From IMG/VR virus record IMGVR_UViG_3300023199_000204, positions 1-64,000 of that record: a stretch of 64,000 bases of DNA. One strand, 5' to 3'. Positions 10,965 to 46,458 of the stretch are shown piece by piece. Made by a program: the position numbers and the translations under genes. Position 1 is the stretch's first letter; every line of letters begins with the position of its first letter. Below the pieces are notes generated by a model that saw only the letters and a list, made by a program, of their open reading frames with translations, had not been told where the DNA came from and did no database searches.

Positions 10965-10985
10965 CTACTAATATTTTATTATAAT
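10965..10985 (+). promoter_or_regulatory. Candidate late promoter CTACTAAT-N7-TATAAT
   Basis: The same motif with the same spacing recurs in other intergenic gaps (18426, 19027, 27424, 46438). Confidence 0.65.
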
Positions 10986-11061
10986 TTACGAAATCTCGAA
11001 TAATAACGGGATATAACGATCAAAGATACAATATAAATATATTTCTTTGGAGGAAATAAAA

Positions 11062-11703
11062 ATGGCATTATACATCTACCAATCGGGCAATGAGCCCCTA
11101 GGTCAATTTGACGTTCTTGACTCATACCAGAGCAGCATTCTTGGTGGTGAGATTGGAACAGTATATGAGGCATCCAGAACTGTAACTGCTTCAGAAAAAG
11201 CCGCATACGACGTTCTTGACGGCTACACTAACACTACTGACGTAACTCGTGCTGGTGTTGCTAATAGAGTTAATACTAATGGACAGCGTCCACTATGGCT
11301 TCTTGATGAAGGAACTACAGGATATGGAACTCTTTTTGGTCAGGTAATTGGAACTCCTACAGGTCTTAGCACCTCTGGAACCAACCTTGGCCCACACACT
11401 TCTGCCGCAAGTGGTAAAGTCACCTGCTGGAATAAACCAGGTCTTTATGCAGTATCACTAGATGCTGTAAATACTGCTTCTGACGGAATTGTTCTTTCAA
11501 ACGTTTCTATGGATCCAGGTTTAGCATTACAACCGCTTAACAACGGTAAGCTAACCCCAACTGGTTCTTCAGGTGCTGTAAACGTAACTGTTGGACACTT
11601 CGTAGAGTTTGAAACTTCACCATTCTTGGTGACAACTCCACCTTCACTAGTTGGAGCCGCTGAAGCAGCAGAGAGAGCTGTATTTAACTTTTTAGCACTG
11701 TAA
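11062..11703 (+). CDS. Capsid decoration/cement-like protein 2
   Basis: Start moved to ATG 11062 (GGAGG RBS). Directly upstream of the major capsid gene; high-expression-type codon usage; paralogous to 3393. Confidence 0.6.
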   Translation: MALYIYQSGNEPLGQFDVLDSYQSSILGGEIGTVYEASRTVTASEKAAYDVLDGYTNTTDVTRAGVANRVNTNGQRPLWLLDEGTTGYGTLFGQVIGTPTGLSTSGTNLGPHTSAASGKVTCWNKPGLYAVSLDAVNTASDGIVLSNVSMDPGLALQPLNNGKLTPTGSSGAVNVTVGHFVEFETSPFLVTTPPSLVGAAEAAERAVFNFLAL

Positions 11704-11726
11704 TTTAAGAGAATAAGAGGATAATA

Positions 11727-11749
11727 TGGGGAGTTTAATAAACTCCCCA
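11727..11749 (+). promoter_or_regulatory. Intergenic hairpin upstream of the major capsid gene (possible mRNA stabiliser or processing site)
   Basis: TGGGGAGTTT-AAT-AAACTCCCCA with no U-tract. Confidence 0.55.
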
Positions 11750-11790
11750 AATCCTAAAAAAATTTTTTCACATAGGAGGACAAAGATACT

Positions 11791-12822
11791 ATGTCTTTAT
11801 TTAGTACACATGGAAAGGGAGGCGAGCTTAATGTTGGTTCAACTCGCGATGCCCTTCAACAAATTGTAAAATATGCAACTATTTTAGAAGATTTGCAGCC
11901 AGCAAATACTGCTTTGGCTCAGAGACCCTCATTTTCTGATCAACAGAGAGATGAGCTAGTAAAAAGAGCACTTTTAACCACAGAGGGCAAAATTGCTTTA
12001 GGTCAGGCAATGGCTAACCCCATTAGAAAGAACCTTGATTATCAAGGGGTAGGAAGAAGAGTTCTTGTTGTAGACCCGTTACCACAGGGAGCACTCCCAG
12101 TTTACGAGCGTGACATTGATGTTGCTGCTACTGTTGTTTCAAGCAATGGTTCAGCACCTGAGAGTCGCGTATTCGGTGACAGGGTAACTATTCCTGAGTT
12201 TGAAGTTGTTTCAAACCCGACAGTAAGAATTGCTGAAGTTCGCAGACGTAGATTCAACGTCATTGACCGTGCCCAGCAGAAAGCTCGCCAAGAAATCCAG
12301 GCTCAAGAGGATGCCAACATCTTCTCAGCTCTTGATTTCGCAGCTGACTCAACTCTTGGTGGTGAAAACACTGCTCAGGACATTGCGGACGCTGGTCTTC
12401 TAAAGCGCGACCTTTCTGAAATTAAGGTTCAGGTTGATCGTTGGGACCTTGTAACCACAAAATTCCTTATGAATATCGTTGAATACAATGATATCCTAAA
12501 CTGGGCAACTGGTGGCGGACAAGGAACTGGTGGTGGCGAGGTTGATCCTGTCACTATGCGTGAAATCCTACAGACTGGTCTTTATGCCCATCTTTGGGGT
12601 GCTGACATCATCGTTTCAAAGGTTGTTCCTCAGGGAACTGTCTTCGGTGTTGCCGATCCTGAGTTTATTGGTGTAATGCCTGTAAGACAGGATATTGAAG
12701 TACTTCCTGCAGACGAGCCTAAACAGTTAAAACTTGGCTGGGTAGTAAACGAAATTATTGGTGTTGGCATTGTCAACTCCCGTGGTTGTGCTGTTGGTCG
12801 TAAATCAGTAGCTGTTGGCTAA
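11791..12822 (+). CDS. Major capsid protein (HK97-like fold)
   Basis: 343 aa; PIRKNLDYQGVGRR.LVVDPLPQG.LP.Y, A.QEIQAQED..IF, G.YAHLWGADIIVS..VP.G and LGWVVNE.IG motifs typical of large-phage capsid proteins; strongly biased codons; followed by a terminator. Confidence 0.85.
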   Translation: MSLFSTHGKGGELNVGSTRDALQQIVKYATILEDLQPANTALAQRPSFSDQQRDELVKRALLTTEGKIALGQAMANPIRKNLDYQGVGRRVLVVDPLPQGALPVYERDIDVAATVVSSNGSAPESRVFGDRVTIPEFEVVSNPTVRIAEVRRRRFNVIDRAQQKARQEIQAQEDANIFSALDFAADSTLGGENTAQDIADAGLLKRDLSEIKVQVDRWDLVTTKFLMNIVEYNDILNWATGGGQGTGGGEVDPVTMREILQTGLYAHLWGADIIVSKVVPQGTVFGVADPEFIGVMPVRQDIEVLPADEPKQLKLGWVVNEIIGVGIVNSRGCAVGRKSVAVG

Positions 12823-12848
12823 ACTTAAAACTTAATAACTAATTAAAG

Positions 12849-12884
12849 GATAAAGGGGCTTTGTTCCCCTTTATCTTTTTTTTT
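12849..12884 (+). terminator. Rho-independent terminator after the major capsid gene
   Basis: GATAAAGGGG / CCCCTTTATC stem followed by T9. Confidence 0.9.
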
Positions 12885-12930
12885 GTCGATAAGAGCGACC
12901 CACACCAAATATAACTCGTTAGGAGGTTGG

Positions 12931-13899
12931 GTGATGGGGAAAAGATTATTTACGAAAAGGGAATTATTAAGAAAATTGGTGGAATTTTCTAAAAAGGTAA
13001 ATAAGAGTAGAATTTCAAAAACCGATTTAGACAAAGATAAAGCATTTCCATCTTCGGCAACATATAAGAGATATTTTGGTAGTTGGAGCAATGCTTTAAA
13101 GTTAGCTAAATTAAAATCTGGAATAATTACTGGAAGACCACAGGATAAGGAGATAATAATTCCAGACAAAGCGTTAGATATAATAAATGGAGAATTATTA
13201 GGTGATGGCTCAATGCCTTTAGGCGGGGAATATAAAAGCAATGCTTATTTTGAGCATTCAACAGCGAATATAGATTATGGAAAATATTTATATAATAAGC
13301 TTAAAAATTATGTTCCATTATTAAATTCCTCATATTGCCCTAAAAGAAATAAGAGATGTAATATTCAATTTAGAACAAGAAGTAGGGTTAATATTGCTTG
13401 GACTAAAATTAGAAACAAATGGTATATTAATGGAAAAAAAATAATACCAAATGATTTAATTCTCACAAAAGAGGTTTGTCTTCATTGGTATTTAGGTGAC
13501 GGATACAGTGAGGATAAGACTTGTAAATTTTCTACTTGTGGATTTACTAAAAAAGAGAACGAAAAATTATGCGAACTATTGTTAAACATTGGCTTTAAAT
13601 CAAACATTAATAAAAGAAGCGGTGGTTATTATATTATAAGAATGAGAAGAAGCAGTTCATTTAAATTTTTAGATTGGTTAGGTCCTTGTCCAGCGAAAGG
13701 ATATGAGCATAGATGGAATATTGGAGAAAAATCCAAGTTATTAACTAAAAAAGATTTAGAAACAGCATTTAAGAAATTTAATAAATCGGTTACAAGAAAA
13801 GAGTTTGATGCTGATAAAGATGTTCCTTCGTCTATAACAGCTATTAGATTATTTGGAAGTTGGAATAAGGCAAAGGAATTTTATTATGAAAATAAGTGA
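12931..13899 (+). CDS. LAGLIDADG endonuclease flanked by homing-endonuclease-associated (PS...FGSW) repeats
   Basis: GELLGDGS and HWYLGDGY motifs; PSSATYKRYFGSW and PSSITAIRLFGSW repeats; AGGAGG RBS before GTG/ATG at 12931/12934. Confidence 0.8.
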   Translation: MMGKRLFTKRELLRKLVEFSKKVNKSRISKTDLDKDKAFPSSATYKRYFGSWSNALKLAKLKSGIITGRPQDKEIIIPDKALDIINGELLGDGSMPLGGEYKSNAYFEHSTANIDYGKYLYNKLKNYVPLLNSSYCPKRNKRCNIQFRTRSRVNIAWTKIRNKWYINGKKIIPNDLILTKEVCLHWYLGDGYSEDKTCKFSTCGFTKKENEKLCELLLNIGFKSNINKRSGGYYIIRMRRSSSFKFLDWLGPCPAKGYEHRWNIGEKSKLLTKKDLETAFKKFNKSVTRKEFDADKDVPSSITAIRLFGSWNKAKEFYYENK

Positions 13900-15773: not shown

Positions 15774-15837
15774 GCGACTTTAATAAAAAATGTAGCTGTT
15801 GTGGAGATTTTTATAATACAAGGGGAAGTAAAGGCAA

Positions 15838-18351
15838 GTGAGAAAAAAAACAACGGCTGAGTTTATAAGCGATGCGATAAAAGTTCATAAAGGTAAATAT
15901 GATTATAGTAAAACAAATTATATTTCATGTAAAAATAAAGTGGAAATAATTTGCTCTATTCACGGAGAGTTTTTTCAAACAGCGAGCGACCATCTATCAG
16001 GGCATGGTTGTAAAAAATGTAAATTCGATAAATTAAATAAATTAAGAAAGGTAAATTTAAAAGAATTTCTTGAAAGAGCAAGAAAATCTCATAACAATTT
16101 TTATGATTATTCTCTAATAGAGAAAATATATGATTGTAATAATGATAAGTTAAAAATTATATGTCCCATACACAGAATATTTTATCAAACGGCATCTTCA
16201 CATATGTCAGGAATAGGATGTAAAGAATGCTATTATGATAATGTTAGAAAAAATCCTCCAAATCCTACTATTACTTTTGATGAATTTTTAGAAAGAGCAA
16301 AAAAGATATTTAGAAATAAATATAAGTATAAAAACTATGAAAATATTTCTTCAAAAATAACAATAATTTGTCCTATACATGGAGAATATGAGCAATTACC
16401 ATATAGTCATTTAAAAAGTAAAGGATGTGTTAAATGTAGAGGAACTGTAAATAATCTTAAAGTATTTATTAGCAAGGCAAATAATATACATAATTTTAGA
16501 TATGATTATAGCAAATCAGCTTATTCTGGAAATGAAGAGTTAATAACAATAATTTGCCCTATACATGGTGAATTTGAACAGATAGCGAGAACTCATTTAA
16601 GTGGCTCAGGATGTAGATTTTGTTATGGAAAACGTAAAAAAACTACTAAAAAATTTATAAAAGAAGTAATGGAAGTTCATGGGAACAAATATGATTACAG
16701 TAAAGTAGATTATCAAAATTGGAAAACAAAAGTTAAAATAATATGCCCTACTCACGGAGAATTTTTCCAAAGGGCTCGACTTCATCTAAAAGGAGCTAAT
16801 TGTCCCAGATGTGCTAATTCTTTTAGAAAGACTACCAAAGAGTTTGTTAAAGAAGTAATGGAAGTTCATGGAAATACATATAATTATAGTAAAACAAAAT
16901 ATATAAATTCTTATACTAAAATAATAATTATATGTTCTACTCACGGAGAATTTAAACAGAACCCAAGAGTTCATTTAAGGGGATCAGGTTGTAGAATTTG
17001 TAATTTATTTAAGGTTTCTAAAATATCTCAAGATTGGCTTGATAATTTCAAAGGAATAGAAAAAGAGGTTCCTATTACCGTTGGTAAAAATAGATTTATA
17101 GTTGATGGATTTAATAAAAATACAAATACTATATATGAGTTTGATGGAGACTTTTGGCATGGAAATCCAGATGTTTTTAACCTTAATGATAAAAATAAAA
17201 CTGCCAAAATGACTTTTAAAAAGCTTAATGAAAAGACATTAAGAAAAAGAAATGTCTTAATTAATGCTGGTTATAATCTTTTATATATATGGGAAAATGA
17301 TTGGAATAAAATTAAAGGAAGTAAAATGGAAAAATATAATAACGCAATTGAAGTGGATGGAAATAAATTAACAAAAAAATATATAGAGAGTTTAGATGAC
17401 AAACAAAGAGAAAAATTAATAGCCCCTATTTTTCATTATTTTAGAATTAATGGCTTTCAATATCCCGATGATGAGAATAAAATAAAAAAAGATTATAAAA
17501 GGCTTAAAGAAAAAGAATTTGATAAAAATATTACTGAATTATATAATAACGCAAGTTTAGCTACTTATATTTGTAAATATTTTTGTAAAAGTTTTTATAA
17601 AACTACAAGTAGAGGAAAACCACATATGATTGATGTTTTTAATGATGATAAATTATTAAGAAAAGTTATTAAAAATAGATTGGGTTTAAATTGGTATAAA
17701 CAAAAAGGAGAAGATGATGTAGAGGCTTTTACGATTTCATTTAAGCAAATAATCCAAGGAATTCGTTCTAGTAGGCTAGTTCCTATGATTTCTATGTTTA
17801 AGCCTAGCATCGCAAAGTTCATATATCAAAAATATAGTAATTATGGAGATACTATTCTAGATTACTCTGCTGGTTTTGGCGGAAGAATGCTTGGTGCTTC
17901 TGTTTTAGATAGAAGATATATCGGAATAGATCCACTAACTTCTTTTGAAATTAATGATATTATCAAATATCTTCAAATTGAAAACTGTTATTTAATAAAA
18001 GGCATTTCTGAAGAAATATATTTAAAGCATAATTCCATAGATCTATCTTTTTCAAGCCCTCCTTACTATGATCTTGAATATTATTCTAACGATAATACTC
18101 AGGCATATAATAAAGGTGAGAATTATTTTTATAATGTATATTGGAGAAAAACATTAGAAAACTCCTATAAAATGCTTAAAAAGGGAAAAATTTTCGCTGT
18201 AAATGTAAAAGACCAGCCAAAAATGGTTGAAATGGCTGGTGATTTTTTCACATATAAGGAAAAAATTGGCTTGAGAACCATAAGATCTCATCTGAACAAA
18301 AAAAATATAGATCCTACCAAATATGAATATATCTACATATTCGAAAAATAA
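15838..18351 (+). CDS. Fusion of DUF723-like repeats and a Vsr/DUF559-like nuclease with an amino (N4C/N6A) DNA methyltransferase
   Basis: Six YDYS..ICPxHGEF.Q...H..G.GC repeats; YEFDGDFWHG and IWENDW; then ILDYSAGFGGR (motif I) and SPPYY (motif IV). Internal AAGGA RBS plus in-frame ATG at 17326. Confidence 0.8.
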   Translation: MRKKTTAEFISDAIKVHKGKYDYSKTNYISCKNKVEIICSIHGEFFQTASDHLSGHGCKKCKFDKLNKLRKVNLKEFLERARKSHNNFYDYSLIEKIYDCNNDKLKIICPIHRIFYQTASSHMSGIGCKECYYDNVRKNPPNPTITFDEFLERAKKIFRNKYKYKNYENISSKITIICPIHGEYEQLPYSHLKSKGCVKCRGTVNNLKVFISKANNIHNFRYDYSKSAYSGNEELITIICPIHGEFEQIARTHLSGSGCRFCYGKRKKTTKKFIKEVMEVHGNKYDYSKVDYQNWKTKVKIICPTHGEFFQRARLHLKGANCPRCANSFRKTTKEFVKEVMEVHGNTYNYSKTKYINSYTKIIIICSTHGEFKQNPRVHLRGSGCRICNLFKVSKISQDWLDNFKGIEKEVPITVGKNRFIVDGFNKNTNTIYEFDGDFWHGNPDVFNLNDKNKTAKMTFKKLNEKTLRKRNVLINAGYNLLYIWENDWNKIKGSKMEKYNNAIEVDGNKLTKKYIESLDDKQREKLIAPIFHYFRINGFQYPDDENKIKKDYKRLKEKEFDKNITELYNNASLATYICKYFCKSFYKTTSRGKPHMIDVFNDDKLLRKVIKNRLGLNWYKQKGEDDVEAFTISFKQIIQGIRSSRLVPMISMFKPSIAKFIYQKYSNYGDTILDYSAGFGGRMLGASVLDRRYIGIDPLTSFEINDIIKYLQIENCYLIKGISEEIYLKHNSIDLSFSSPPYYDLEYYSNDNTQAYNKGENYFYNVYWRKTLENSYKMLKKGKIFAVNVKDQPKMVEMAGDFFTYKEKIGLRTIRSHLNKKNIDPTKYEYIYIFEK

Positions 18352-18425
18352 CCCACCCCGCCTAAATCTACCTACCAATCACTTATCCATTATCTTTTCT
18401 TTCCAAATATACTAATTAATAACAA

Positions 18426-18446
18426 TTACTAATAGATAGTTATTTC
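18426..18446 (+). promoter_or_regulatory. Candidate late promoter TTACTAAT-N7-TATTTC
   Basis: Matches the recurrent motif; directly upstream of GGAGG and ATG 18458. Confidence 0.55.
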
Positions 18447-18457
18447 GGAGGAAAAAG

Positions 18458-19019
18458 ATGTCTAAAAAGATTAAAAACCTTATTATGTTGGCGGACTCTC
18501 TTGATAAAGAAGGGAAGTTTGCTGATGCTGATTATATTGATAATTTAATTCACTCCTTTGCGGCAAAAAGTCCGCCAAAAAAAATATAAACAAACTGGGG
18601 CAAAAAATAAAAGTGATTATGCTGACCCAAAAAATTATAAATATCCCATACATACGGAGAAGAATGTAAGGTCTGCTCTATCATATTTTAGTCAGTCCAA
18701 AAATTACAATAAATATTCTCCAAGTGAGAGAGGCTCTATTTGGTCAAAAATCAAACGAGCAGCTAAAAAGTATAATATTAAACTCGATCCAAAGAACGAT
18801 CCTCCTTGGGGCAAAAAGTCTAAAACAGCAAAATTAAACCAAGAGATGGTAGATTTATTAGCTGGCTCTGGGCTTTGTATTAATGGACAAGACACATTTA
18901 ATAAATATTTAGATTTCTTAAATACACTAGATGATAATGAATTATCTGTTTTTAAATTCAGACTACAGCCATTTTCTGGCTCTAGTAGTGGGGAATCATA
19001 TGATACAAGCCTCAACTAA
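18458..19019 (+). pseudogene. LA..LD..G module fused to a DUF6582-like domain, split by +1 at A8 (18577-18584)
   Basis: ATG 18458 with GGAGG RBS reads MSKKIKNLIMLADSLDKEGKFADADYIDNLI..SPPKK. Removing one A joins it to YKQTG..YADPKNYKYPIHTEKNVRSALSYF..IKRAAKKYNI. Confidence 0.65.
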
Positions 19020-19026
19020 TCAAAAT

Positions 19027-19047
19027 CTATCAATATTTGGGTATTTT
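19027..19047 (+). promoter_or_regulatory. Candidate late promoter CTATCAAT-N7-TATTTT
   Basis: Recurrent motif upstream of 19081. Confidence 0.6.
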
Positions 19048-19080
19048 TAATAGCAGTATATTAATATAGGAGCCTTTTAA

Positions 19081-19368
19081 ATGAGTAGATGGGATTATTT
19101 TAACGAAATTACAGTAACAGAAACGAGCTTTCCTAGTTCTGCTCAAGTTGATTTTAATTTTCACACGGTTGGATTTAATTTAATAAATCAAGGGTCTGAA
19201 ATTATTGAATATTCTTTTGATGGGACCAATGTTCATGGTCAATTAGATGCTTCTGGAGATACAGTAGAGGCTGATTTTATCAGCAGAATAGTAAATAAAA
19301 TATGGTTCCGCGTGTCTTCTGGGATTTCTCAAGTTAGAGTCGAAGGATGGGGGAGTTCAGGAGGATGA
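19081..19368 (+). CDS. Small virion protein, single ~90-aa beta anchor domain
   Basis: W.YF..ITV.ETSFP..GF.L.N.G..IEYSFDG.NVHG..NKIWF..VEGWG; four copies in this locus. Confidence 0.55.
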   Translation: MSRWDYFNEITVTETSFPSSAQVDFNFHTVGFNLINQGSEIIEYSFDGTNVHGQLDASGDTVEADFISRIVNKIWFRVSSGISQVRVEGWGSSGG

Positions 19369-19371: not shown

Positions 19372-21648
19372 ATGTCTAAATGGGACCATTATAGTGTAAT
19401 CGAAGTAACAGACGCAAGTTTTCCTTCCATTCCGCAAGTTTCTTTTAAATTTAATTCAAAAGGATTTAAGCTTGTTAATATTGGCGAGACAGAAGTTGTT
19501 TATTCTTTCGATGGGACAAATGTTCATGGAAAATTAAATCCTAATGATAATTCAGTAATACGAGAATTTCCTGACAGAATCGTTAATAAAATTTGGTTTA
19601 TAAGTTCTTCTTCTGGATATGTTAGAATTTCTGGCTGGGGGGCTGGTGGGGTAATATCTCAAGGAATTGGGTCTTCTTCTGGTGAAGACAGTAGCTCAAG
19701 CGATAATATTATAGAAGTACCTTTATTTGATGTAAATTATTCTTTGGAAAACGGAGTTGACTATTTAAATCCAGTATTAACTATCAACGGCATAACCGAG
19801 ACGCCTGTATTTAGATACAAGGGTGGCGATGCTTCGGCCAGTGGTTTGCCCGCATGGGGCTATGGACCCGATTTGGATTTTGCTTCTGCTGGTGATGACC
19901 CTACCTATAACGACGGTTCCCCTTTGCTTGGCGCCAATGACGATAGCGTTAAGTTCAACAATGGTGATTTTTTCCGCTATGACGCTTCGACAACATTCGC
20001 GGATATAACCTCCGAAGATATTGTGATGGAAATGGTGGTCGTTAGGGGAGGCTTGGGCGGTATATTTTCAAAGCGTGATAGCTCCAATCATGGCTGGGTT
20101 ATTCAGGACGAAACAAACGATATTCGCCTTCTATTAAGTGACCCCGACGGTGATAACGTTTCCATCATTACGAACGCGCTAGCGGCTGGCCAGTGGATAC
20201 ACCTAATGTTTTTTGTGGACCGTAGCAACGTTATTGGTGGAGCGGTTTATATTAATGGTACGAACGAGACACTTACTATTATTGGCTCTATCACAGACAT
20301 AGGTACGCTCGTAACATCGGCGAATCTTGCCGTAGGCGCTTTGCGTTTCGACGGTGTGCTAAAATCTCTCGCCAATGTCGCCTACGTCGCCATGTGGAAA
20401 CGCGACGCTTGGCTCGATACTCACCTACAAGCGGCGGTAGCAAAAGAACGCTTTGCGAAACTAACGGGTGTATGGCCCCAAAGGGCCACGGGTACAAAAG
20501 TTCCAACGGTAATGACCAGAACTACCACGGCCTATTCTGAAAAGATTGAAGCCGATGGAACAAGAAGGCTTTACTACGTAGGAATGAATTGGCCGCGCGT
20601 GGTTTCAAGGCCCGATGCTAACGGAGATATAGTAACGGGATACTTGGCGGAGCCTGCAACGACTAACCTTATTGGCTACAGCGAATATTTTAATAATTGG
20701 TCAAAGGGTAACTGTACCATAAGCAGCGATGCTCTAGTAGGGCCTACGGGACAAAGTACAGCGGATGAACTACACGAATCAGGTTCGTTTACAAGTAGCA
20801 ATGCAGCGGTGGGCAGAACAGCAAGTTTAACGGATGGAACGACATACACATTTTCTTGCTGGGTTAAAGCAGCTGGTAGAAGTTGGGTGCGCCTTGCAGC
20901 AATATCGGCTCCAACGGCTACGGCATACTTTGACGTAACAAACGGGATTGTTGGCACAACAAGCGGCACCACCGCTGCAGGAATGGAGTCTTGGGGGGAC
21001 GGCTGGTATCGATGCTGGATTACATATGCCGCTACAGGTACGGCAGGAAGAGTACATAATATCGTTCCAGCCGAGGACGACAACGATCCTGTGTACGATA
21101 GTCTTGATGACCACTCGCTTTCACTTTACGGCGCCCAAGTGGTAGCAGGTGCTGTCCCTTCTAGCTACATCATTACAGTCTCGTCGGCAGTCGCCACGCG
21201 TACCGCCGATAACCTTTACTACAAGGGCGATGACGGGAACATTAATGCGGATGGGAAGGGTTCTGTATACGTCGAAGCTTTGCCCCCTGTGTCTACGGCT
21301 GGAACACATTTGGTAAATCTCAACGATGGAGGTAGCGCTAGCGACCGTATCTTTACGATTATCGATAGTTCTGGTTTCTTTGCCGCCGATAGTCGCGCAA
21401 GTGGGGGCAACGATGGCGTAGTAGACTCGACAATCAACGCGCTTGACGGTGTATCTCACTCGGTAATGGTGAAGTGGAAAGCGAATTCACTGCAATTGTT
21501 TGTTGATGGAACATCGGAGGGCACTGTCGACACGTCGGTGGATATCCCCGATGACCTTGATCGCATAGCAATTGGTGAGGCAGAAGCAGGTGCTGTACGG
21601 CTTGACGGCATAGTCCAACGCGTGAAAATCAACAAGGATGATTCATAA
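19372..21648 (+). CDS. Head/tail fibre: anchor domain, LamG/concanavalin-like domains and a spike-fibre carbohydrate-binding-like domain
   Basis: N-terminus matches the 19081 domain; WIHLMF..AVYING (LamG-like); EPATTNL, GDGWYRCWIT and YGAQV...PSSYI...TRTAD motifs; GC-rich body. Confidence 0.65.
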   Translation: MSKWDHYSVIEVTDASFPSIPQVSFKFNSKGFKLVNIGETEVVYSFDGTNVHGKLNPNDNSVIREFPDRIVNKIWFISSSSGYVRISGWGAGGVISQGIGSSSGEDSSSSDNIIEVPLFDVNYSLENGVDYLNPVLTINGITETPVFRYKGGDASASGLPAWGYGPDLDFASAGDDPTYNDGSPLLGANDDSVKFNNGDFFRYDASTTFADITSEDIVMEMVVVRGGLGGIFSKRDSSNHGWVIQDETNDIRLLLSDPDGDNVSIITNALAAGQWIHLMFFVDRSNVIGGAVYINGTNETLTIIGSITDIGTLVTSANLAVGALRFDGVLKSLANVAYVAMWKRDAWLDTHLQAAVAKERFAKLTGVWPQRATGTKVPTVMTRTTTAYSEKIEADGTRRLYYVGMNWPRVVSRPDANGDIVTGYLAEPATTNLIGYSEYFNNWSKGNCTISSDALVGPTGQSTADELHESGSFTSSNAAVGRTASLTDGTTYTFSCWVKAAGRSWVRLAAISAPTATAYFDVTNGIVGTTSGTTAAGMESWGDGWYRCWITYAATGTAGRVHNIVPAEDDNDPVYDSLDDHSLSLYGAQVVAGAVPSSYIITVSSAVATRTADNLYYKGDDGNINADGKGSVYVEALPPVSTAGTHLVNLNDGGSASDRIFTIIDSSGFFAADSRASGGNDGVVDSTINALDGVSHSVMVKWKANSLQLFVDGTSEGTVDTSVDIPDDLDRIAIGEAEAGAVRLDGIVQRVKINKDDS

Positions 21649-27423: not shown

Positions 27424-27444
27424 CTACTAAATTTTCACTATTAA
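27424..27444 (+). promoter_or_regulatory. Candidate late promoter CTACTAAA-N7-TATTAA
   Basis: Recurrent motif in the intergenic gap. Confidence 0.55.
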
Positions 27445-27461
27445 TAAAGAGGCACTAGTTT

Positions 27462-28164
27462 ATGATTAAGGACTATAAAGACATAATTGACTTAGCTGAA
27501 AACTTAGACAGTGAAGTTAAATATTCTCCTAGATATGGAGGGAGATTGTCTTTAACAATGAAGGGAAAGCACATTCCCACTTCTATAACGGAGTTTGAAT
27601 TCAACTTTATAAGAAACATAGTAAAAACTTATAAACTAAAATGTGGGTATGAATGTGCTACCGCATTTGGCATTTCGATGTTAGCCCCTGCTCTTGAAAT
27701 GAAAGAATATAATGGAAAAATAATAATAATTGATTGTTATTTGGAAGAAAAAGACGGTGAATTTTTTCCACAATAAAGATGTAAATACTGATTCTTGGGG
27801 ATATAAGTCAGCAAAGTTTTTACGAGATGCTGTTGGTCTTGATAACACTTGTTTTTTTAAAATTGGTTGGAGCCCAGATGATGTTTTAGAAAAATTATTG
27901 GAAAATTTAGATTTTCCAAATGAAAAACTAGATTATGTTTTTATAGACGCAGAGCATAAAACGGAGTGCGCAATAAAAGATATTAACGCTATCAAGTCGT
28001 ATCTAGCGGAAAAGTTTATAATATTTTTACACGATGTCCATTGCCTTGGTGGCATTAACGAGTACTTAATGAAAGAATTCGGAATGAAATATACGAAAGC
28101 CGAGGGGTGTGAATACCCTAGTGGGAAAGGATATAATTTAGCATATATTATAAATTTATTCTAG
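27462..28164 (+). pseudogene. Class I SAM-dependent methyltransferase (Methyltransf_24-like) split by +1 at T6 (27762-27767)
   Basis: YECATAFGIS..IIIIDCY lies in the first ORF; LDYVFIDAEH..IFLHD lies in the second; removing one T fuses them. Confidence 0.7.
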
Positions 28165-28172: not shown

Positions 28173-29324
28173 ATGTCAACACTTAAACTAACAATTACTG
28201 TATCAGATATAAGTGATGTAATTTCTTTATATGATAAGATACAAATTCAAAGGTCTGAATCGGGCCCACCATATTCAGATGCTGTTGATATAACATCTTC
28301 TGCTTCTACTTCCGCAACTCTTTCCAGTGAGTTAAATGGCCCATATAATATAAACGGGCAAACTTTATCTTTTAAAATAAATGGAGGCAACACTCAAACT
28401 TTAACCTTTACTTCATCAAACCCTGTTTCATCTACAGCGGCTGCTTCTGAATTTACGACATTTGCCTCTGGAGCCACAGCTTCTGGAGCACTTGGAAACT
28501 TTATTATGACAACTGCTTTGACTGGAACTGGTTCTTCTATAGAAGTAATAGGAGGAACTGCTTTAACTGAATTAGGATTTGATGCCGGAGATAAAGATAC
28601 GGGTGAAAACTCTGAAATAACTTTAGTTGCGAACACTTCAACTTATGAGTTCACTGACAGCAGTGGAAGTGAAAATTACTATTATAGAACAAGATACTAC
28701 AACTCTTCAACAGATGCTGTTAGCTGTTATTCTGATTGGATTCAAGGTGCTGACATAAGTGCTGATTTAGAAATTGGTGACGCTCCAATATACGCCTGGA
28801 CTCAAGATGAAATATGTGGAATTAATATATTGCTGAAACAGTTAAAAGCCAGACTAAAAAGTGATGGATTGGCAGAAACTATTGATGAGTATGGAAACAT
28901 AGAATTATCAAATTGTCCAATATTTACAGATGATGAATTAGTATGTTTCTTACAAAACAGTTTAAGTGAGTTTAATCAAACGCCACATTTTACTAGTTTT
29001 ACGTTTGCGGACCAGGTTATTTATGACAGATATGCTCATATTATTGTAGAAGGTGCTTTTATATTAGCAACAGGGGCACAAATGTTAATTGAAGCGGGAA
29101 GAGAGTTTACAATTACAGATAATGGAATTACTATGAATCCGCCACCATTATCTAATGTTCTAAATAATCAACTTGGACATTTTGTTACAAGGCACACACA
29201 AGCTTTAGAAAAGATTAAATGGAGTATTAAACCAAAACCAACGGGATTTGGAAGCTTCAGGGTACTTGCTTCAAATCCAAATTATCTTCGTCTACGGCAC
29301 CTAAGGCAAAGGAGAATTATATAG
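28173..29324 (+). CDS. Neck/head-tail adaptor protein with N-terminal Ig-like extension
   Basis: C-terminal FTDDEL..FL..SLSEFN.TP..IIVEGA..LIEAGREF.ITDNGI helical connector-like domain; synteny. Confidence 0.55.
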   Translation: MSTLKLTITVSDISDVISLYDKIQIQRSESGPPYSDAVDITSSASTSATLSSELNGPYNINGQTLSFKINGGNTQTLTFTSSNPVSSTAAASEFTTFASGATASGALGNFIMTTALTGTGSSIEVIGGTALTELGFDAGDKDTGENSEITLVANTSTYEFTDSSGSENYYYRTRYYNSSTDAVSCYSDWIQGADISADLEIGDAPIYAWTQDEICGINILLKQLKARLKSDGLAETIDEYGNIELSNCPIFTDDELVCFLQNSLSEFNQTPHFTSFTFADQVIYDRYAHIIVEGAFILATGAQMLIEAGREFTITDNGITMNPPPLSNVLNNQLGHFVTRHTQALEKIKWSIKPKPTGFGSFRVLASNPNYLRLRHLRQRRII

Positions 29325-30439
29325 TGAAAGAAGAGTGTCCAGTTTGCGGTAGAAAAAGTAAAACAAAAACAGGTGTAAGTAGTCATTTATTCAAATGTAA
29401 AGATGAAAAACATATAAATTATATAGAAAATATGAATAAAACTATAATAAATAATTTTTCTATAATGAAATCTCCATATGAATTAGATGTATATTGTTCT
29501 CCATATTATATTAGGAAGATATGGGATACAATTCCAGAAAATAAAGATAGAAAAAAATTAGCTAACTCTACATCTTTAAAAAAGCAGTGGAAAAAAGGAA
29601 CAAGGACTGTTCCAAAGGGATTAACTAATAAAAATTATAAATATAGTTTAAATCACAAACATACTATTAGTGAAACAGCCAAAAATACTATAATAGAATT
29701 ATTTAATTCCAATCTTACATCAAAAGAAATTTCTATTAAAGCCAGTTGTGATGTTAAAACTGTTATTCCTGTTTTTAGAAGATATTTTAGTGACGAAGAG
29801 GTAGATGAACGAATTAAGAGAATTTTAAAATTAGCAAGCATTAAATCTGGAGTGTCAAATAGTTTAAAGGTAAAGTTCCCTGAAAAATACAAAAATATTG
29901 TAAAAGAATTTAATGATACTAATGGGTTAAAAACAATAGCAGAAAAATATAAAACGGGAACAGGGGCAGTTAAGAAGATATGGATAGAAAAATTTGGAAA
30001 AAAGGCATATGAAGGCCGTCTTGCTATGATGTTAAAATTACAAAAAGAGAGGGCAGGGAAATCTCTTAAAAAGGCAAAATTCTTAGGTTCTAAAAATGAA
30101 AGACTATGTTATAGTCTTTTAAAAGAGAGTATAGAGTATAATGTAAAACATCACGATTATAGTGTAGTTCCCAGATTAGAAATAGATATAACAATTCCTG
30201 ATCTTAAAATCGCCATTTGTTGGGATGGAATAGGGCATAGGAAACCGGTTTTTGGGAAAAAGCCTTATAATAAAGTAGTTAAAAATGATAAAATAAGAAA
30301 ATTAATACTTGATAGAAAAAAATGGACACATATTTCTGTTGTTGATAATGGAAGTCATAACAAGGAATTTGTTAAAGAAAAAGTCAAAGATATTATAAAA
30401 ATTATAAATGATGGAAATCAACAGTATATTGAAATATAG
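29324..30439 (+). CDS. HTH plus DUF559/Vsr-like endonuclease (putative homing endonuclease)
   Basis: SKNE..EIDITIPDLKIAICWDGIGH..D; N-terminal CxxC..H. Confidence 0.7.
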   Translation: MKEECPVCGRKSKTKTGVSSHLFKCKDEKHINYIENMNKTIINNFSIMKSPYELDVYCSPYYIRKIWDTIPENKDRKKLANSTSLKKQWKKGTRTVPKGLTNKNYKYSLNHKHTISETAKNTIIELFNSNLTSKEISIKASCDVKTVIPVFRRYFSDEEVDERIKRILKLASIKSGVSNSLKVKFPEKYKNIVKEFNDTNGLKTIAEKYKTGTGAVKKIWIEKFGKKAYEGRLAMMLKLQKERAGKSLKKAKFLGSKNERLCYSLLKESIEYNVKHHDYSVVPRLEIDITIPDLKIAICWDGIGHRKPVFGKKPYNKVVKNDKIRKLILDRKKWTHISVVDNGSHNKEFVKEKVKDIIKIINDGNQQYIEI

Positions 30440-38700: not shown

Positions 38701-38760
38701 AAATGAGAATATTAAAATATTTATTACTGCTTTTGTTAAAAAGTTACAAAAGGAAAAAAA

Positions 38761-39024
38761 ATGATTGAAAATGAAGAAAAAATTAAAAGATCTAGAAAAT
38801 GGGTTTTAGCTTTAATGGTGATAATTATCGCAACAGTGGCTGCTTTTGTTCCGCCCCTATTAAGTACTTGGGTTTTTAAAGATACTAGTCGTGTAGTAAT
38901 ATTGACAGGAACAGAATGGGTTTCAGTTATTACTTTAGTCACTGGAGCTTACATAGGCGGTAATGTGTGGCAACGCAAGGTTGAAATAGAGAACGGAAAA
39001 ACTAAAGAAAATGCGGAAGCATAG
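38761..39024 (+). CDS. Small two-TM membrane protein (holin-like)
   Basis: SRKW followed by two hydrophobic helices and a charged C-terminus. Confidence 0.4.
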   Translation: MIENEEKIKRSRKWVLALMVIIIATVAAFVPPLLSTWVFKDTSRVVILTGTEWVSVITLVTGAYIGGNVWQRKVEIENGKTKENAEA

Positions 39025-39035
39025 TGGAGGAATAA

Positions 39036-43577: not shown

Positions 43578-43587
43578 AAGGATAGAT

Positions 43588-44097
43588 ATGAATAAAGAAA
43601 AATCAGGAATAGATTTATTAAAAGAAATAAATGAAAAATTAGATTTGCTCAATAAAAGATTAGAAATAGTTGAGCAAAATAGCAAAATAATGCTTAACAC
43701 AAGAGGAGCGGTTGAACAACCAAAAGAGTTTAAGCCCTCAATTGCCCCAACCCCGAAACCCATTGAAAAGAAGCCAAGAATTATTAATGATCACAGGGAG
43801 TTGAAAAGAGATGATAAAGGGACAGAGTTTAAAGGAGTGAAAGGAAAAACTAAGGTTATAGGCAAAATTAAAAAAGATAATAAGTTTGTTGCTGGGGTTA
43901 TGATAAAAGTTTTTGATTCACAGAAAAATTTAGTTAAACAAACAAAAACAAATAGGGCTGGCGAATGGATGTCTTTTCTTCCCGAAGGCACATATAGTGC
44001 GATATATAGCTTAAAAGATATGATTAATGCAAAAGTTAATTTTAATGTAACTGCTGGGAATAGCATAGTTAGAGTTCCACAACCAAAGGAGATTTAA
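43588..44097 (+). CDS. Coiled-coil plus carboxypeptidase-regulatory/transthyretin-like domain protein
   Basis: V.GV.IKVFD....VK.TKTN..GEW...LPEG.Y. Confidence 0.5.
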   Translation: MNKEKSGIDLLKEINEKLDLLNKRLEIVEQNSKIMLNTRGAVEQPKEFKPSIAPTPKPIEKKPRIINDHRELKRDDKGTEFKGVKGKTKVIGKIKKDNKFVAGVMIKVFDSQKNLVKQTKTNRAGEWMSFLPEGTYSAIYSLKDMINAKVNFNVTAGNSIVRVPQPKEI

Positions 44098-45090
44098 GTG
44101 ATAGAATGTAATAGATGCCGTAGAAATAGAAAACACAAAGCAAAAGGAATGTGTCTTTCTTGTTATTCTGGATCTTTATATAAAAAAATAATTTGCTCAA
44201 ATTGTAAAAATAAAAGAAGACAGTTTAGAAAAAGTTCTTCATTGTGCTCTAAATGTTTTAAACACTTATCTAAATTTAAATGTAAAAATTGTAATAGCAA
44301 AATACATTTTGAAAATGGATTTTGTAAATTTTGTTACATACCTCCAGAGAAAACTTGTAATAGTTGCTATAAAGTCGGTATTCTTAAATCTAATTTATGC
44401 TCTAAATGTTATAATAAAAAATATTATTCTAAAAATATTGGAAAATGCGAAATATGTAAAAAAGAAAAAAACATATTTAACCATAGTGGTAAATATATAT
44501 GTTCAAAATGTAATCATAGGAATATAAGAACTATATCTATTTGTAAAATATGTTCAAAAGAGAAGGTTATATATAAAGACGACAAGTGTAAATATTGTTG
44601 CGTGAAGGTTGGGAAATGTAAAAAATGTAATATAATAAGAAAATTATTTTATGATAATAAAACAGTATGTAGATTATGTTATTATCCTCCTAAAAGAGAA
44701 TGTTATTTTTGTAATAAATATGGAATAATATCAAAAATAAAAGATGGCAAATATATGTGTAATAAATGCTATAATTCTCAACCAGAAAGAATAGCTATTT
44801 TACAAAATAACAGAGCAAGTAGGGGAAATATTTCAGGAAGTGAGTGGTTATATATAATGAATTCTACAAATTGGAAATGTTTTTATTGTGAGCAAAAGTT
44901 GAACAAGAATAATAGAACTGTTGATCATATTATTCCTATAATAAAAGGCGGTTCTAATAGTATAGATAACTTAGTTCCTTCTTGTAATATATGTAATTCA
45001 AGCAAGAACGCCCAAAATGTATTTAAATGGCTTAAAATAAAAAATATTGAATTGACGGAAGAAAAATTAAAAACCCTTGGAGTTAAGTAA
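44098..45090 (+). CDS. Cys-rich HNH endonuclease
   Basis: Many CxxC pairs; CFYC..TVDHIIP..GG....NLVPSC..CN.SK. Confidence 0.85.
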   Translation: MIECNRCRRNRKHKAKGMCLSCYSGSLYKKIICSNCKNKRRQFRKSSSLCSKCFKHLSKFKCKNCNSKIHFENGFCKFCYIPPEKTCNSCYKVGILKSNLCSKCYNKKYYSKNIGKCEICKKEKNIFNHSGKYICSKCNHRNIRTISICKICSKEKVIYKDDKCKYCCVKVGKCKKCNIIRKLFYDNKTVCRLCYYPPKRECYFCNKYGIISKIKDGKYMCNKCYNSQPERIAILQNNRASRGNISGSEWLYIMNSTNWKCFYCEQKLNKNNRTVDHIIPIIKGGSNSIDNLVPSCNICNSSKNAQNVFKWLKIKNIELTEEKLKTLGVK

Positions 45091-45872
45091 TGAGTACATC
45101 GCACAGAGTATATAGTGATCTTTTTCAAGAAGCTAATTTTGTAAATCAGACGGCTGTATCTCAAGGGAAAAATTTACTTATAGATGTTATTAGAGAATCG
45201 TTTAAAAAAGATACATTTTATCGCTATACTCACGACGCCTTTGGTTTCCCTTTAACACCGGATTTAACAGCTCTTCCTCCAGATATTCAAGAGGAAAGAA
45301 CAACAAGAATATATATAGGAGATGTATATCGTTATGATAAAAGATTTAATCCTTCAATAACAGTTAGACATTCTTCGGGAAAATATAAGCCAATATCTAT
45401 TAATCAAAATCATACCACTAAATATAGATTGGATTTGGTAATTGATGGATATGGAAATAGATCATATATTAGGGTTCCGACACATAGGGTCATTACTGGA
45501 GCTTGGGAACAAACATTTGAAGTTAAAATAACTTCAGAAAGCACACAGGACCGCGAAGAATTGACGGATATTGTGACAGGGTATTTACAAGGTGTTGTTC
45601 GTCAAGAACTGTATGAGGCTGGACTTTTTGTTAGAGGAGTGAGTATGAGTTCTGAAACTGAAGAAGATTGGGCTAATGATAAGTTATATATACAGAGTAG
45701 TAGTCTGGAAACATATTCAGAATGGCGTAGGCACCTTCCAATAAATAGTGTAATTGAAACACTTAATTTTTGTTTTAACTATGGTATTTTAGGAAGTGGC
45801 AACTTTGCTTTAGACAGTATTATGGTTCATACTGAAGATAATACAATCAGTTATGAAGTTCCAGTCACTTAA
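45090..45872 (+). CDS. Tail completion/terminator-like protein
   Basis: Position before the sheath; P.ITV..GAW...FEV.I.SES..DREEL.D.V pattern. Confidence 0.5.
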   Translation: MSTSHRVYSDLFQEANFVNQTAVSQGKNLLIDVIRESFKKDTFYRYTHDAFGFPLTPDLTALPPDIQEERTTRIYIGDVYRYDKRFNPSITVRHSSGKYKPISINQNHTTKYRLDLVIDGYGNRSYIRVPTHRVITGAWEQTFEVKITSESTQDREELTDIVTGYLQGVVRQELYEAGLFVRGVSMSSETEEDWANDKLYIQSSSLETYSEWRRHLPINSVIETLNFCFNYGILGSGNFALDSIMVHTEDNTISYEVPVT

Positions 45873-46360
45873 TTTTTAATCCATTCTCTCATAGCACAGC
45901 AGTTTTTACATAAAAGATCATAGTTTTTAAGAGTGTCTCTCATTTTTTTTAAAGACATCCCTTTAAGTTTACTTCTAGTATATTTTTTTCCGTTGTAGAA
46001 TTCATATATTATATAAGGATATGATAAATTACAATCTTCACAACTACCACCTCTTTCTATAATAATTTCTTCCAAATTTTCATTAAATTTTATATCTTTT
46101 ACTTTGTTTTGGCATTCAATACAATAGCTATATGGAGTTCCACTTTTTCTTATATAAAATTCTTTAATATTCTTTCTATTTAAGCACCTAGCACAAAAAG
46201 CCTCATCTTTTTTTAAATTTACAATATAGCTTCTAGAGTTTCCTCCCTTATATTCTGAACAAGAAAGGCAAAATTTTCTACTGGATAATTCCAGTACCTC
46301 TCCAGCTTTGTCTTTGATTTTATTAGGAAATTCTTTATTACAGTTTTTACATTTTATCAT
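45869..46360 (-). CDS. Zinc-finger/HNH-like endonuclease, the only minus-strand gene
   Basis: CxxC pairs, GG.CEDC...YEF...LLCKNC; GAGGA RBS on the minus strand. Confidence 0.6.
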   Translation of the reverse strand: MIKCKNCNKEFPNKIKDKAGEVLELSSRKFCLSCSEYKGGNSRSYIVNLKKDEAFCARCLNRKNIKEFYIRKSGTPYSYCIECQNKVKDIKFNENLEEIIIERGGSCEDCNLSYPYIIYEFYNGKKYTRSKLKGMSLKKMRDTLKNYDLLCKNCCAMREWIKN

Positions 46361-46372
46361 TTTGTCCTCAAA

Positions 46373-46393
46373 TATATTTAGATTTATTGATAG
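46373..46393 (-). promoter_or_regulatory. Candidate late promoter (minus strand) CTATCAAT-N7-AATATA
   Basis: Reverse-complement copy of the motif just upstream of the RBS of the 46360 gene. Confidence 0.45.
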
Positions 46394-46437
46394 TTACTTA
46401 TTTATCTGTCAATCTAAAATGGTTGAAGTTTTATTAT

Positions 46438-46458
46438 CTATCAATAAAACATTATATC
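46438..46458 (+). promoter_or_regulatory. Candidate late promoter CTATCAAT-N7-TATATC
   Basis: Recurrent motif upstream of the sheath gene. Confidence 0.6.

What the first reader, a model, noticed from the sequence alone, without database searches (positions are those of the whole stretch)
10965..46458. Phage-specific promoter motif CTAYYAAW-N7-TAT
Five intergenic gaps preceding structural operons contain the motif with identical spacing: CTACTAAT-N7-TATAAT (10965), TTACTAAT-N7-TATTTC (18426), CTATCAAT-N7-TATTTT (19027), CTACTAAA-N7-TATTAA (27424) and CTATCAAT-N7-TATATC (46438). A minus-strand copy precedes the 46360 gene. This is neither sigma70 -35/-10 nor the T4 late TATAAATA, implying a phage-encoded sigma factor, activator or RNA polymerase.
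Basis: partly seen in the sequence, partly recalled or inferred. Interest (0 to 1): 0.6.

Follow-up and report, generated by a model that had tools for sequence, protein, structure and literature searches.

The report
Conserved jumbo-phage promoter motif CTAYYAATA
A short DNA word (CTAYYAATA, then YAT seven bases on) sits in front of the head, tail and sheath genes of an uncultivated 316-kb phage and is kept at the same genes in distant relatives, so it is almost certainly a phage-specific promoter, but which protein reads it is still unknown.

Summary
In the whole 316-kb phage record, CTAYYAAW-N7-TAT occurs 10 times on the gene strand. All 10 are intergenic: none lies in 270 kb of coding sequence and none on the opposite strand of the gaps (0.3 expected). 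Six lie outside the window, so they are an out-of-sample test.

The motif is kept upstream of orthologous genes (sheath, head operon, tail gene, PhoH) in relatives with about 47% protein identity and 30-46% GC, while the flanking DNA has diverged. It follows gene orientation: a minus-strand copy precedes the divergent HNH gene.

The refined form is C1-T-A-Y-Y-A-A-T-A9, then Y16-A17-T18, in a fixed register, with no -35 element.

The most likely reading is a -35-independent, extended -10-like promoter with -11 = A6 and the start near A17. Host RNA polymerase redirected by a phage factor would read it.

The genome has no recognisable RNA polymerase, gp55, MotA or sigma-54. It does encode a 213-aa sigma-70-family protein outside the window, but nothing links that sigma to this motif. 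Two of the five sites (18426, 27424) are weaker variants. No RNA data exist, so start sites are inferred. This is a real but fairly ordinary kind of feature with a new consensus.

The parts
10965..10992 (+). Promoter motif copy (CTACTAATA, TAT at 16-18) heading the head unit: gene 11062-11703, then the major head gene.
   Evidence: PWM trained on relatives scores 17.7 bits. The motif is kept before the orthologues in G002 and G003 and in IMG/VR loci down to 46% protein identity.
18426..18453 (+). Weak variant copy (TTACTAATA, TAT at 16-18), with start codon 18458 at +33 and GGAGG in between.
   Evidence: T replaces the invariant C1, and the core PWM score is only 0.3 bits. The downstream ORF has no orthologue in the relatives, so it could not be footprinted. 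Possible site only.
19027..19054 (+). Strongest copy (CTATCAATA, TAT at 16-18) before 19081-19368 and the 758-aa tail protein gene.
   Evidence: Top PWM score in the genome, 23.7 bits. The motif is kept before the orthologues in G002 and G003. Tail protein assigned by phrog_5939 and Laminin_G_3.
27424..27451 (+). Variant copy (CTACTAAAT, TAT at 16-18), with start codon 27462 at +39 and AAGAGG in between.
   Evidence: It departs from the consensus at positions 8 and 9 (core PWM 5.3 bits). The downstream methyltransferase-like split ORF is absent from the relatives. Probable but unverified.
46438..46465 (+). Copy before the tail sheath gene (CTATCAATA, TAT at 16-18, TGATG at 24-28).
   Evidence: PWM 20.5 bits. 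Twelve non-redundant sheath-upstream regions (sheath 57-69% identical) keep all three blocks in one register while the flanks diverge.
46366..46393 (-). Minus-strand copy (CTATCAATA read on the minus strand from 46393) 33 nt before the start of the divergent HNH endonuclease gene.
   Evidence: Correctly oriented copies lie 35-45 nt before the orthologous minus-strand gene in G001, G003 and G005, and before the minus-strand gene at the same place in G002. They are also visible in the sheath loci.
11062..11703 (+). First gene of the head unit (213 aa, no family match).
   Evidence: No PHROG hit. 69-71% identical orthologues in G002 and G003.
11791..12822 (+). Major head protein gene.
   Evidence: phrog_2522 major head protein, E 5e-76.
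12845..12889 (+). Strong intrinsic-terminator-like hairpin plus T run that closes the head unit.
   Evidence: 14-bp stem with 5 G-C pairs, followed by a T run.
19372..21648 (+). Tail protein gene downstream of the 19027 copy.
   Evidence: phrog_5939 tail protein, E 1e-36; Laminin_G_3.
46551..49094 (+). Tail sheath gene. The true start is ATG 46551, by the RBS and by the N-termini of relatives.
   Evidence: phrog_279 and phrog_2839 tail sheath; start judged.
45869..46360 (-). HNH homing-endonuclease gene served by the minus-strand copy.
   Evidence: phrog_2255, E 3e-19, aligned from residue 1.
52913..52940 (+). Terminator-like hairpin that ends the sheath unit.
   Evidence: GGGGAGAG...CTCTCCCC followed by a T run.

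Best explanation
The motif is the core promoter of a phage-specific transcription class shared by a clade of uncultivated jumbo myoviruses. Its refined form is a rigid module: an A-rich run, then C1-T-A-Y-Y-A-A-T-A9-(W), five free bases, then Y16-A17-T18. There is no -35 element. I read it as a -35-independent, extended -10-like promoter. Y5-A6-A7-T8-A9-W10 is the -10 hexamer, with the invariant A6 at -11. C1-T-A-Y is an upstream extension at -16 to -13. Transcription starts at or next to A17, so Y16/A17 are -1/+1. Host RNA polymerase core would use it after being redirected by a phage-supplied or phage-modified specificity factor. It drives the strongly expressed virion units (head, tail, sheath) and a few others. 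What is shown: the motif is real, strand- and gap-specific, follows gene orientation, and is conserved.
For: Statistics: 10 of 10 strict hits are intergenic on the gene strand, against 0.32 expected. Outside the window there are 6 against 0.34 expected.

Independent model: a PWM trained only on relatives, applied to this genome, gives at 16 bits or more 8 intergenic-plus hits, 0 coding-plus, 1 intergenic-minus and 3 coding-minus.

Conservation:
- Among reciprocal-best-hit gene pairs, the motif is upstream in both genomes in 11 pairs, in one only in 3+3, and in neither in 288.
- Twelve sheath-upstream regions keep the blocks in one register while the flanks diverge.
- Head-operon loci keep the motif down to 46% protein identity. 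More distant ones carry the variants CTGCTAATA, CTGGTAATA and CCATCAATA.
- Motif-naive k-mer screens recover it in orthologous upstream regions and in G002, G003 and G004.

Orientation: minus-strand copies sit 33-45 nt before the minus-strand HNH gene in five genomes.

Unit structure: the head unit runs from the motif at 10965 to a strong terminator at 12845. The sheath unit runs from 46438 to a terminator at 52913.

No -35: information content is about zero from -45 to -5.

Start position: six or seven sites have the start codon at +32 to +37 and a Shine-Dalgarno sequence at +21 to +30. The transcript must therefore begin by about +20.

Reader: no RNA polymerase of any known type was found. 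A sigma-70-family gene is present and syntenic in four genomes.
Against: There is no transcript data at all. No public RNA run holds this phage. The conservation of T18 and a weak third block (T24-G25-n-A27) are not explained by a start at A17, and they fit a start near +28. The would-be -7 position (W10) is T in only about half the sites. The 213-aa sigma lacks region 3, which reads extended -10 elements in sigma-70, and it has an RpoD-like -35-reading helix that this motif would leave unused. Intrinsic terminators just upstream of the motif are not significantly enriched: 6 of 43 sites against 31 of 436 background windows. The orthologue counts are not independent, because the relatives share ancestry.
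Confidence: 0.5

Rival explanations
1. It is a promoter, but laid out. Y16-A17-T18 would be a short -10 element with A17 at -11, and transcription would start near +27 to +29. The 8/9-mer at about -27 to -19 would be the binding site of a phage activator or sigma-appropriation factor that replaces -35 recognition, working like T4 MotA/AsiA but placed closer to the -10.
For: YAT is very strongly kept (Y 39/49, A 42/49, T 40/49), more than an ordinary start-site preference would predict. A weak third block, T24 (24/36), G25 and purine-rich 27-29, sits where the discriminator and start would fall. In sheath promoters TGAAR at 24-28 is kept in a fixed register.
Against: Six or seven sites have the start codon at +32 to +37 with the Shine-Dalgarno sequence at +21 to +30. 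These include three orthologous HNH genes and the pair G002 36160 / G003 37169. A start at +28 would cut the ribosome site out of the mRNA. No T is kept at the would-be -7, position 21. No MotA homologue was found. Part of the G/A signal at 24-29 comes from Shine-Dalgarno sequences of short-leader genes.
Confidence: 0.25
2. The module is the promoter of an unrecognised phage-encoded RNA polymerase or a non-sigma-70 initiation factor. It would be a rigid promoter of roughly 20-28 bp that spans the start site, as in T7-like enzymes or the phiKZ/AR9 virion polymerases, whose early promoters are highly conserved AT-rich words of about 10 nt centred near -10.
For: The blocks sit in a rigid register over about 28 bp with no -35. 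The review PMC7598289 describes virion-polymerase early promoters as conserved words of about 10 nt near -10 that can be found bioinformatically. The record is a linear contig without end repeats and may be incomplete, and many large proteins have no family match.
Against: No match to the RNA polymerase beta or beta' domains or to T7-like polymerase. No DFDGD-type catalytic motif in any frame of five related genomes totalling 1.2 Mb. The large conserved proteins that could be annotated are baseplate or tail proteins. The phage carries a sigma-70-family gene, which points to use of the host polymerase.
Confidence: 0.1
3. It is not a core promoter. It would be an operator for a phage DNA-binding regulator, or a signal in the RNA (a processing or stability site) at the 5' ends of selected units.
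For: Strand specificity and upstream position would also fit an RNA element. Only about 12-15 sites exist for about 470 genes.
Against: It is the only conserved element between strong terminators and the next gene at several sites. No other promoter-like signal is enriched in these gaps. No Rfam family matches. The sequence is AT-rich and shows no obvious pairing potential (not tested by folding).
Confidence: 0.08

Closest known systems
T4 late promoters (TATAAATA at -10, read by gp55 with gp33 and the gp45 clamp)
   Same: There is no -35 element. A single highly conserved AT-rich word of 8-9 bp lies just upstream of the start. It sits before virion genes. TAYYAATA matches TATAAATA at 6 of 8 positions.
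   Different: The sequence differs at positions that T4 does not tolerate being changed (own knowledge). An invariant C precedes the word, and a conserved YAT follows it. No gp55 homologue was found. The phage is not T4-like: its head protein falls in phrog_2522 and its sheath resembles those of Mycobacterium and Lysinibacillus myoviruses.
Extended -10 (-35-independent) promoters, such as the middle and late promoters of Thermus phage P23-45 read by phage-modified host holoenzyme
   Same: It has a -10-like hexamer plus a 3-4 bp upstream extension and no -35. It plausibly depends on phage proteins that switch the host enzyme away from -35-dependent promoters.
   Different: The extension is CTAY rather than TG or TGTG. 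The hexamer is YAATAW rather than TATAAT. No homologues of the P23-45 factors were sought. The comparison rests on my own knowledge of that system.
Early promoters of RNA-polymerase-encoding jumbo phages (phiKZ, AR9), read by virion RNA polymerase
   Same: These are also highly conserved AT-rich words of about 10 nt centred near -10, findable by bioinformatics alone, and they differ from phage to phage (PMC7598289).
   Different: Those phages encode split beta/beta' polymerases, and none is detectable here. Here the motif marks virion genes rather than early operons.
T4 middle promoters (MotA box at -30 plus a sigma-70 -10, sigma appropriation)
   Same: A phage-specific upstream box combined with a short TA-containing downstream element.
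   Different: The box-to-TAT spacing is 7 bp here, against 11-13 bp in T4 (own knowledge). No MotA homologue was found.

Membership tests
Canonical sigma-70 (-35/-10) promoter | A TTGACA-like hexamer 16-18 bp upstream of the -10 element. | tested here: not met
   Information content is about zero at every position from -45 to -5 in 49 aligned sites. TTGACA-N16-18-TATAAT matches are not enriched in the gaps, and TTGACA alone is not enriched either.
Canonical sigma-70 (-35/-10) promoter | A TATAAT-like hexamer with conserved A at -11 and T at -7. | tested here: inconclusive
   If the hexamer is positions 5-10 (YAATAW), then A6 at -11 is invariant but position 10 is T in only about half the sites. 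If the hexamer begins at Y16, position 21 is not conserved.
T4-type late promoter | The sequence TATAAATA. | tested here: not met
   The consensus is TAYYAATA, and pyrimidines at positions 4-5 are invariant in strong sites.
T4-type late promoter | A gp55-family late sigma encoded by the phage. | tested here: not met
   phrog_234 and phrog_12791, the families that T4 gp55 itself hits, have no match in the 316-kb record. The record may be incomplete.
T4-type late promoter | A -35-independent promoter with a single conserved word near -10. | tested here: met
   No upstream conservation. Whether the word lies near -10 is inferred from leader lengths, not measured.
Jumbo-phage virion or non-virion RNA polymerase promoters (phiKZ/AR9 type) | The phage encodes split beta/beta'-like RNA polymerase subunits. 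| tested here: not met
   PF00562 and PF00623 have no match. No D-x-DGD catalytic motif appears in a plausible ORF in six-frame translations of five related genomes.
T7-like single-subunit RNA polymerase promoter | The phage encodes a T7-like RNA polymerase. | tested here: not met
   PF00940 gives only a 12.8-bit sub-threshold hit in a 154-aa ORF.
Sigma-54 (-24/-12) promoter | GG at -24 and GC at -12, and a sigma-54 protein. | tested here: not met
   The two main blocks are about 12 bp apart, as in sigma-54 promoters, but they contain no GG or GC. There is no Sigma54_DBD match in the genome. A host sigma-54 cannot be examined.
T4 middle promoter (MotA-dependent) | A MotA homologue, and a box 11-13 bp upstream of the -10. 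| tested here: not met
   No MotCF domain match. The spacing here is 7 bp.
Promoter (any class) | Primary transcript 5' ends just downstream. | not testable with these tools
   Only three DNA metagenome runs hold the phage, and no RNA run does.

The most novel reading that the evidence does not exclude
The rigid 28-bp three-block module (CTAYYAATA / YAT / TGnAA) is read by an initiation system that is not sigma-70-like. This could be a still unrecognised phage RNA polymerase, or a new class of phage specificity factor that gives host core enzyme a -24/-12-like geometry. It would be shared by a whole clade of uncultivated jumbo phages of roughly 300-400 kb.
Probability: 0.12. Interest if true: 0.75.

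Novelty: new member of a known kind. Interest (0 to 1): 0.42.

Why it matters
The motif gives a tested, transferable signature for transcription-unit starts in a clade of uncultivated jumbo phages that has no cultured relative. It splits the 64-kb virion region into units: head, tail and sheath. It shows that the clade's strongest promoter class is -35-independent. It also sets up a concrete biochemical question: which phage protein retargets the host polymerase to CTAYYAATA? The motif, together with the separate two-block motif found in passing, offers two candidate targets for the one recognisable phage sigma. The short, strong, orthogonal-looking promoter could also be of practical use once its reader is known.

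Tried and rejected
- **RNA evidence:** I did not use read laying, because DNA contigs cannot show starts.
- **Cultured relatives:** megablast and tblastn against INPHARED gave no near relative.
- **Generic EM motif finder on all gaps:** it was swamped by tRNA-like T-arms and ribosome sites. I replaced it with strand-asymmetry k-mer screens, orthologue footprinting and a cross-genome PWM.
- **Terminator just upstream as support:** not significant, 6 of 43 sites against 31 of 436 background windows.
- **Host-type sigma-70 promoters:** neither TTGACA-N17-TATAAT nor TTGACA is enriched in the gaps.
- **Readers sought and not found:** RNA polymerase beta and beta', T7-like polymerase, gp55, a second sigma, sigma-54 and MotA. 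Weak Sigma70_r4-like hits in the window turned out to be HTH domains of homing endonucleases.
- **Large conserved unknown proteins as hidden polymerases:** those that could be annotated are baseplate or tail proteins, or intein-bearing PrkA, SpoVR and RNR.
- **Literature:** searching for the word CTATCAAT with promoter and phage found nothing relevant.
- **An early miscount:** I first thought the 8-mer-to-YAT spacing varied from 7 to 9. A careful recount of the sheath loci shows a fixed register.
- **Footprinting of 18426 and 27424:** it failed because their downstream ORFs are absent from the relatives.
Full report
**Context.** The window is the first 64 kb of a 316,473-bp IMG/VR virus record. 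The record has 32% GC, and my ORF caller puts about 470 of about 516 ORFs on the plus strand. It carries 32 tRNA genes, all beyond 163 kb. The window holds the virion module:
- major head protein, 11791-12822 (phrog_2522);
- a tail protein, 19372-21648;
- tail sheath, 46551-49094;
- many HNH and LAGLIDADG homing endonucleases.

No cultured phage is close.

**The observation.** All five sites exist as described. Over the whole record the strict form CTAYYAAW-N7-TAT has 10 plus-strand hits.
- All 10 are intergenic. None lies in the 270 kb of coding sequence.
- The minus strand has 5 hits, all coding.
- Dinucleotide-preserving shuffles of the intergenic DNA expect 0.32 hits, with a maximum of 3.
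- Outside the window there are 6 hits against 0.34 expected.
- Strict sites are several-fold denser per kb of gap inside the virion module than elsewhere: 4 in 3.7 kb against 6 in 38.6 kb.
- Only CTACTAAT and CTATCAAT occur at strong sites.

**Relatives.** The sheath protein recovered 23 IMG/VR loci at 42-69% identity. I fetched five related contigs in full: G001 318 kb, G002 302 kb, G003 161 kb, G005 111 kb and G004 162 kb. They share 42-134 genes with this phage at about 47-50% median protein identity, and their GC ranges from 30 to 46% (G004 was not included in this count).

Four lines of comparative evidence follow.
- **Sheath gene.** Twelve non-redundant upstream regions keep CTAT(C/T)AATA, Y-A-T at positions 16-18 and TGAAR at 24-28 in one fixed register. 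Everything upstream is unalignable, and the leaders vary from 17 to 127 nt.
- **Orthologue pairs.** Among reciprocal-best-hit gene pairs, the 8-mer lies upstream in both genomes in 11 pairs, in one genome only in 3+3, and in neither in 288. Fisher p is 3e-15, inflated by shared ancestry. The shared sites precede the head-unit gene, the small gene before the tail protein, the sheath, a small gene before the glycosyltransferases, PhoH, and a small gene before a DHH phosphoesterase.
- **Motif-naive screens.** Six-mers shared between orthologous upstream regions are topped by TATCAA, TCTATC, ATCAAT, CTATCA, TACTAA and CTACTA. Strand-asymmetric 8-mers in the gaps of G002, G003 and G004 include TATCAATA, ATCAATAA, TCTATTAA and CTATTAAT near the top.
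- **Cross-genome PWM.** A PWM trained only on the relatives' sites and applied to this genome gives these counts:

| Score | Intergenic-plus | Coding-plus | Intergenic-minus | Coding-minus |
|---|---|---|---|---|
| 16 bits or more | 8 | 0 | 1 | 3 |
| 14 bits or more | 12 | 2 | 3 | 13 |

A second footprint, on the head-unit gene, shows CTACTAATA or CTATCAATA plus TAT at 16-18 down to 46% protein identity. More distant loci carry the variants CTGCTAATA, CTGGTAATA, CTGGCAATA and CCATCAATA. The most invariant letters are therefore C1 and A6-A7-T8-A9.

**Orientation.** The minus-strand 8-mer at 46386-46393 lies 33 nt before the start of the minus-strand HNH gene (45869-46360). Correctly oriented copies lie 35-45 nt before the orthologous minus-strand gene in G001, G003 and G005, and before the minus-strand gene at the same place in G002. 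Other minus-strand 8-mers in the gaps are far from any minus-strand gene and lack A9 and YAT.

**Anatomy.** Forty-nine gap sites from five genomes were aligned on the 8-mer.
- Positions -4 to -1 are A-rich, and position 0 is T-rich.
- C1-T-A-Y-Y-A-A-T follows, then A9 (38/49) and W10.
- Five free positions follow.
- Then Y16 (39/49), A17 (42/49), T18 (40/49) and W19.
- No position from -45 to -5 carries information, so there is no -35 element.
- In 36 long-leader sites a weak third block remains: T24 (24/36), G25 (16/36), A27 (23/36).

**Where transcription probably starts.** Six or seven sites have their start codon at +32 to +37 from C1, with a clear Shine-Dalgarno sequence at +21 to +30. 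They are:
- the HNH gene in G000, G001 and G003, whose N-terminus is fixed by a PHROG alignment from residue 1;
- the orthologous pair G002 36160 / G003 37169;
- G003 103311;
- the weaker G000 sites 18426, 27424 and 298487.

No site has a start codon closer than +32. If TAT were the -10 and the start lay near +28, these mRNAs would lose their ribosome sites. If the start is at or near A17, every one of them keeps a 15-20 nt leader with its Shine-Dalgarno sequence.

With A17 as +1, standard sigma-70-family geometry puts the invariant A6 at -11 and Y5-A6-A7-T8-A9-W10 as the -10 hexamer. C1-T-A-Y then falls at -16 to -13, the place of an extended -10 element. That is the model I favour.

This remains an inference. 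The strong conservation of T18 and the weak third block fit the rival geometry better, so I give the rival a quarter of the probability.

**Unit structure.** The head unit runs from the motif at 10965 through gene 11062-11703 and the head gene to a strong terminator at 12845-12889. The sheath unit runs from 46438 to a terminator at 52913. Some sites in G000, G001 and G003 lie 4-27 nt after a terminator. This is not significantly more frequent than in background gaps.

**Who reads it.** No multisubunit or T7-like RNA polymerase is detectable: there are no Pfam matches and no catalytic motifs in six frames of five genomes. The large conserved proteins that could be annotated are baseplate or tail proteins. 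There is no gp55, sigma-54 or MotA.

One genuine sigma-70-family gene lies at G000 135122-135763, outside the window.
- It encodes 213 aa. Sigma70_r4 scores 56.7 bits and TIGR02937 scores 76.8 bits, both above their cut-offs.
- It aligns to primary sigma factors over regions 2 and 4 but lacks region 3.
- It is syntenic (SLOG protein, sigma, ribonucleotide reductase) in G000, G001, G002 and G005.
- Its region 4.2 recognition helix reads ERIRQIE, as in RpoD. In the three relatives it reads QRIEQI, and the region 2.4 positions also vary.
- Yet all these phages share the same CTAYYAATA motif.

This genome also holds a second gap motif: GCGTGCGTGA, 17-18 bp, then TCGACGATTTTA. It has five copies at 200-292 kb, all on the plus strand, each 24-113 nt before a start codon. 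Its spacing is the classical two-block sigma spacing, and it is absent from the relatives. It is at least as good a candidate target for the sigma. The candidates are the sigma, an unrecognised gp55-like factor, or host sigma modified by phage proteins.

**Comparison with known systems.** By layout the closest are T4 late promoters and extended -10 promoters used by phage-modified host enzyme. The 10-nt early-promoter words of phiKZ/AR9-type phages look similar (PMC7598289), but those need phage polymerases that are absent here. The motif fails the sequence and factor tests for each of these families (see the membership table). It works like them without being a member.

**Verdict.** The motif is a real, clade-conserved promoter signal with a new consensus. 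Its reader is unidentified and its start site is untested. Phage-specific promoter words are a familiar kind of feature, so I rate it as a new member of a known kind with moderate interest.

Noticed in passing
G000 (outside the window): block 1 starts at 200271, 208611, 227960, 254841 and 292000, plus strand: A second intergenic motif with five copies: GCGTGCGTGA, 17-18 bp, then TCGACGATTTTA. Each copy lies 24-113 nt before a start codon of mostly small unknown genes. It has canonical sigma -35/-10 spacing and is absent from relatives G001-G005. It is a candidate target of the phage's 213-aa sigma.
   Followed up: partly
G000 135122-135763 (outside the window; L002:1327-1968): A 213-aa sigma-70-family protein with regions 2 and 4 but no region 3. 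Its region 4.2 is RpoD-like. It is syntenic in four related phages, but the DNA-reading residues differ between them.
   Followed up: partly
G000 125925-129134, 130333-134208 and 135769-138849 (outside the window): PrkA-like AAA kinase, SpoVR-like protein and class II ribonucleotide reductase genes. Each is interrupted by an intein with a LAGLIDADG endonuclease.
   Followed up: no
window 2603-3403, 4079-5152, 15838-18351, 29324-30439, 45869-46360, 49114-50100: An unusually dense set of homing-endonuclease genes (LAGLIDADG, HNH and a repeat-rich 837-aa HNH protein with many paralogues in G002) scattered through the virion module.
   Followed up: no
window 18458-18589 / 18558-19019 and 27462-27776 / 27730-28164: Two pairs of overlapping ORFs in different frames that look like single genes split by a frameshift. 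The second pair resembles a class I methyltransferase. The cause could be assembly error, decay or programmed frameshifting.
   Followed up: no
G000 about 158000-167000 (outside the window): A stretch with higher GC (about 40%) and large gaps that hold many tRNA T-arm-like GGTTCGA words beyond the tRNAs aragorn calls. Rfam adds one extra tRNA at 166194-166269.
   Followed up: partly
window 46451-46479, minus strand: A near-consensus sigma-70-type promoter match (TTGAAA, 17 bp, TG-TATAAT) on the minus strand. It overlaps the plus-strand sheath motif and points at the HNH gene. It may be chance in AT-rich DNA.
   Followed up: no
Head-operon leaders in distant relatives (L134, L135, L138, L139, L142, L143, L145, L148, L152): A short word (A)TGTAAG(A/C/T) recurs in the leader before the orthologue of gene 11062-11703 in many distant relatives, but not in this phage. 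It could be a different conserved regulatory element.
   Followed up: no
G003 gaps and G005 gaps: Lineage-specific gap words: TGGCGGCAATGG (6 copies, G003) and AAGGAGCAAATCTT (up to 17 copies, G005, probably a tandem array).
   Followed up: no
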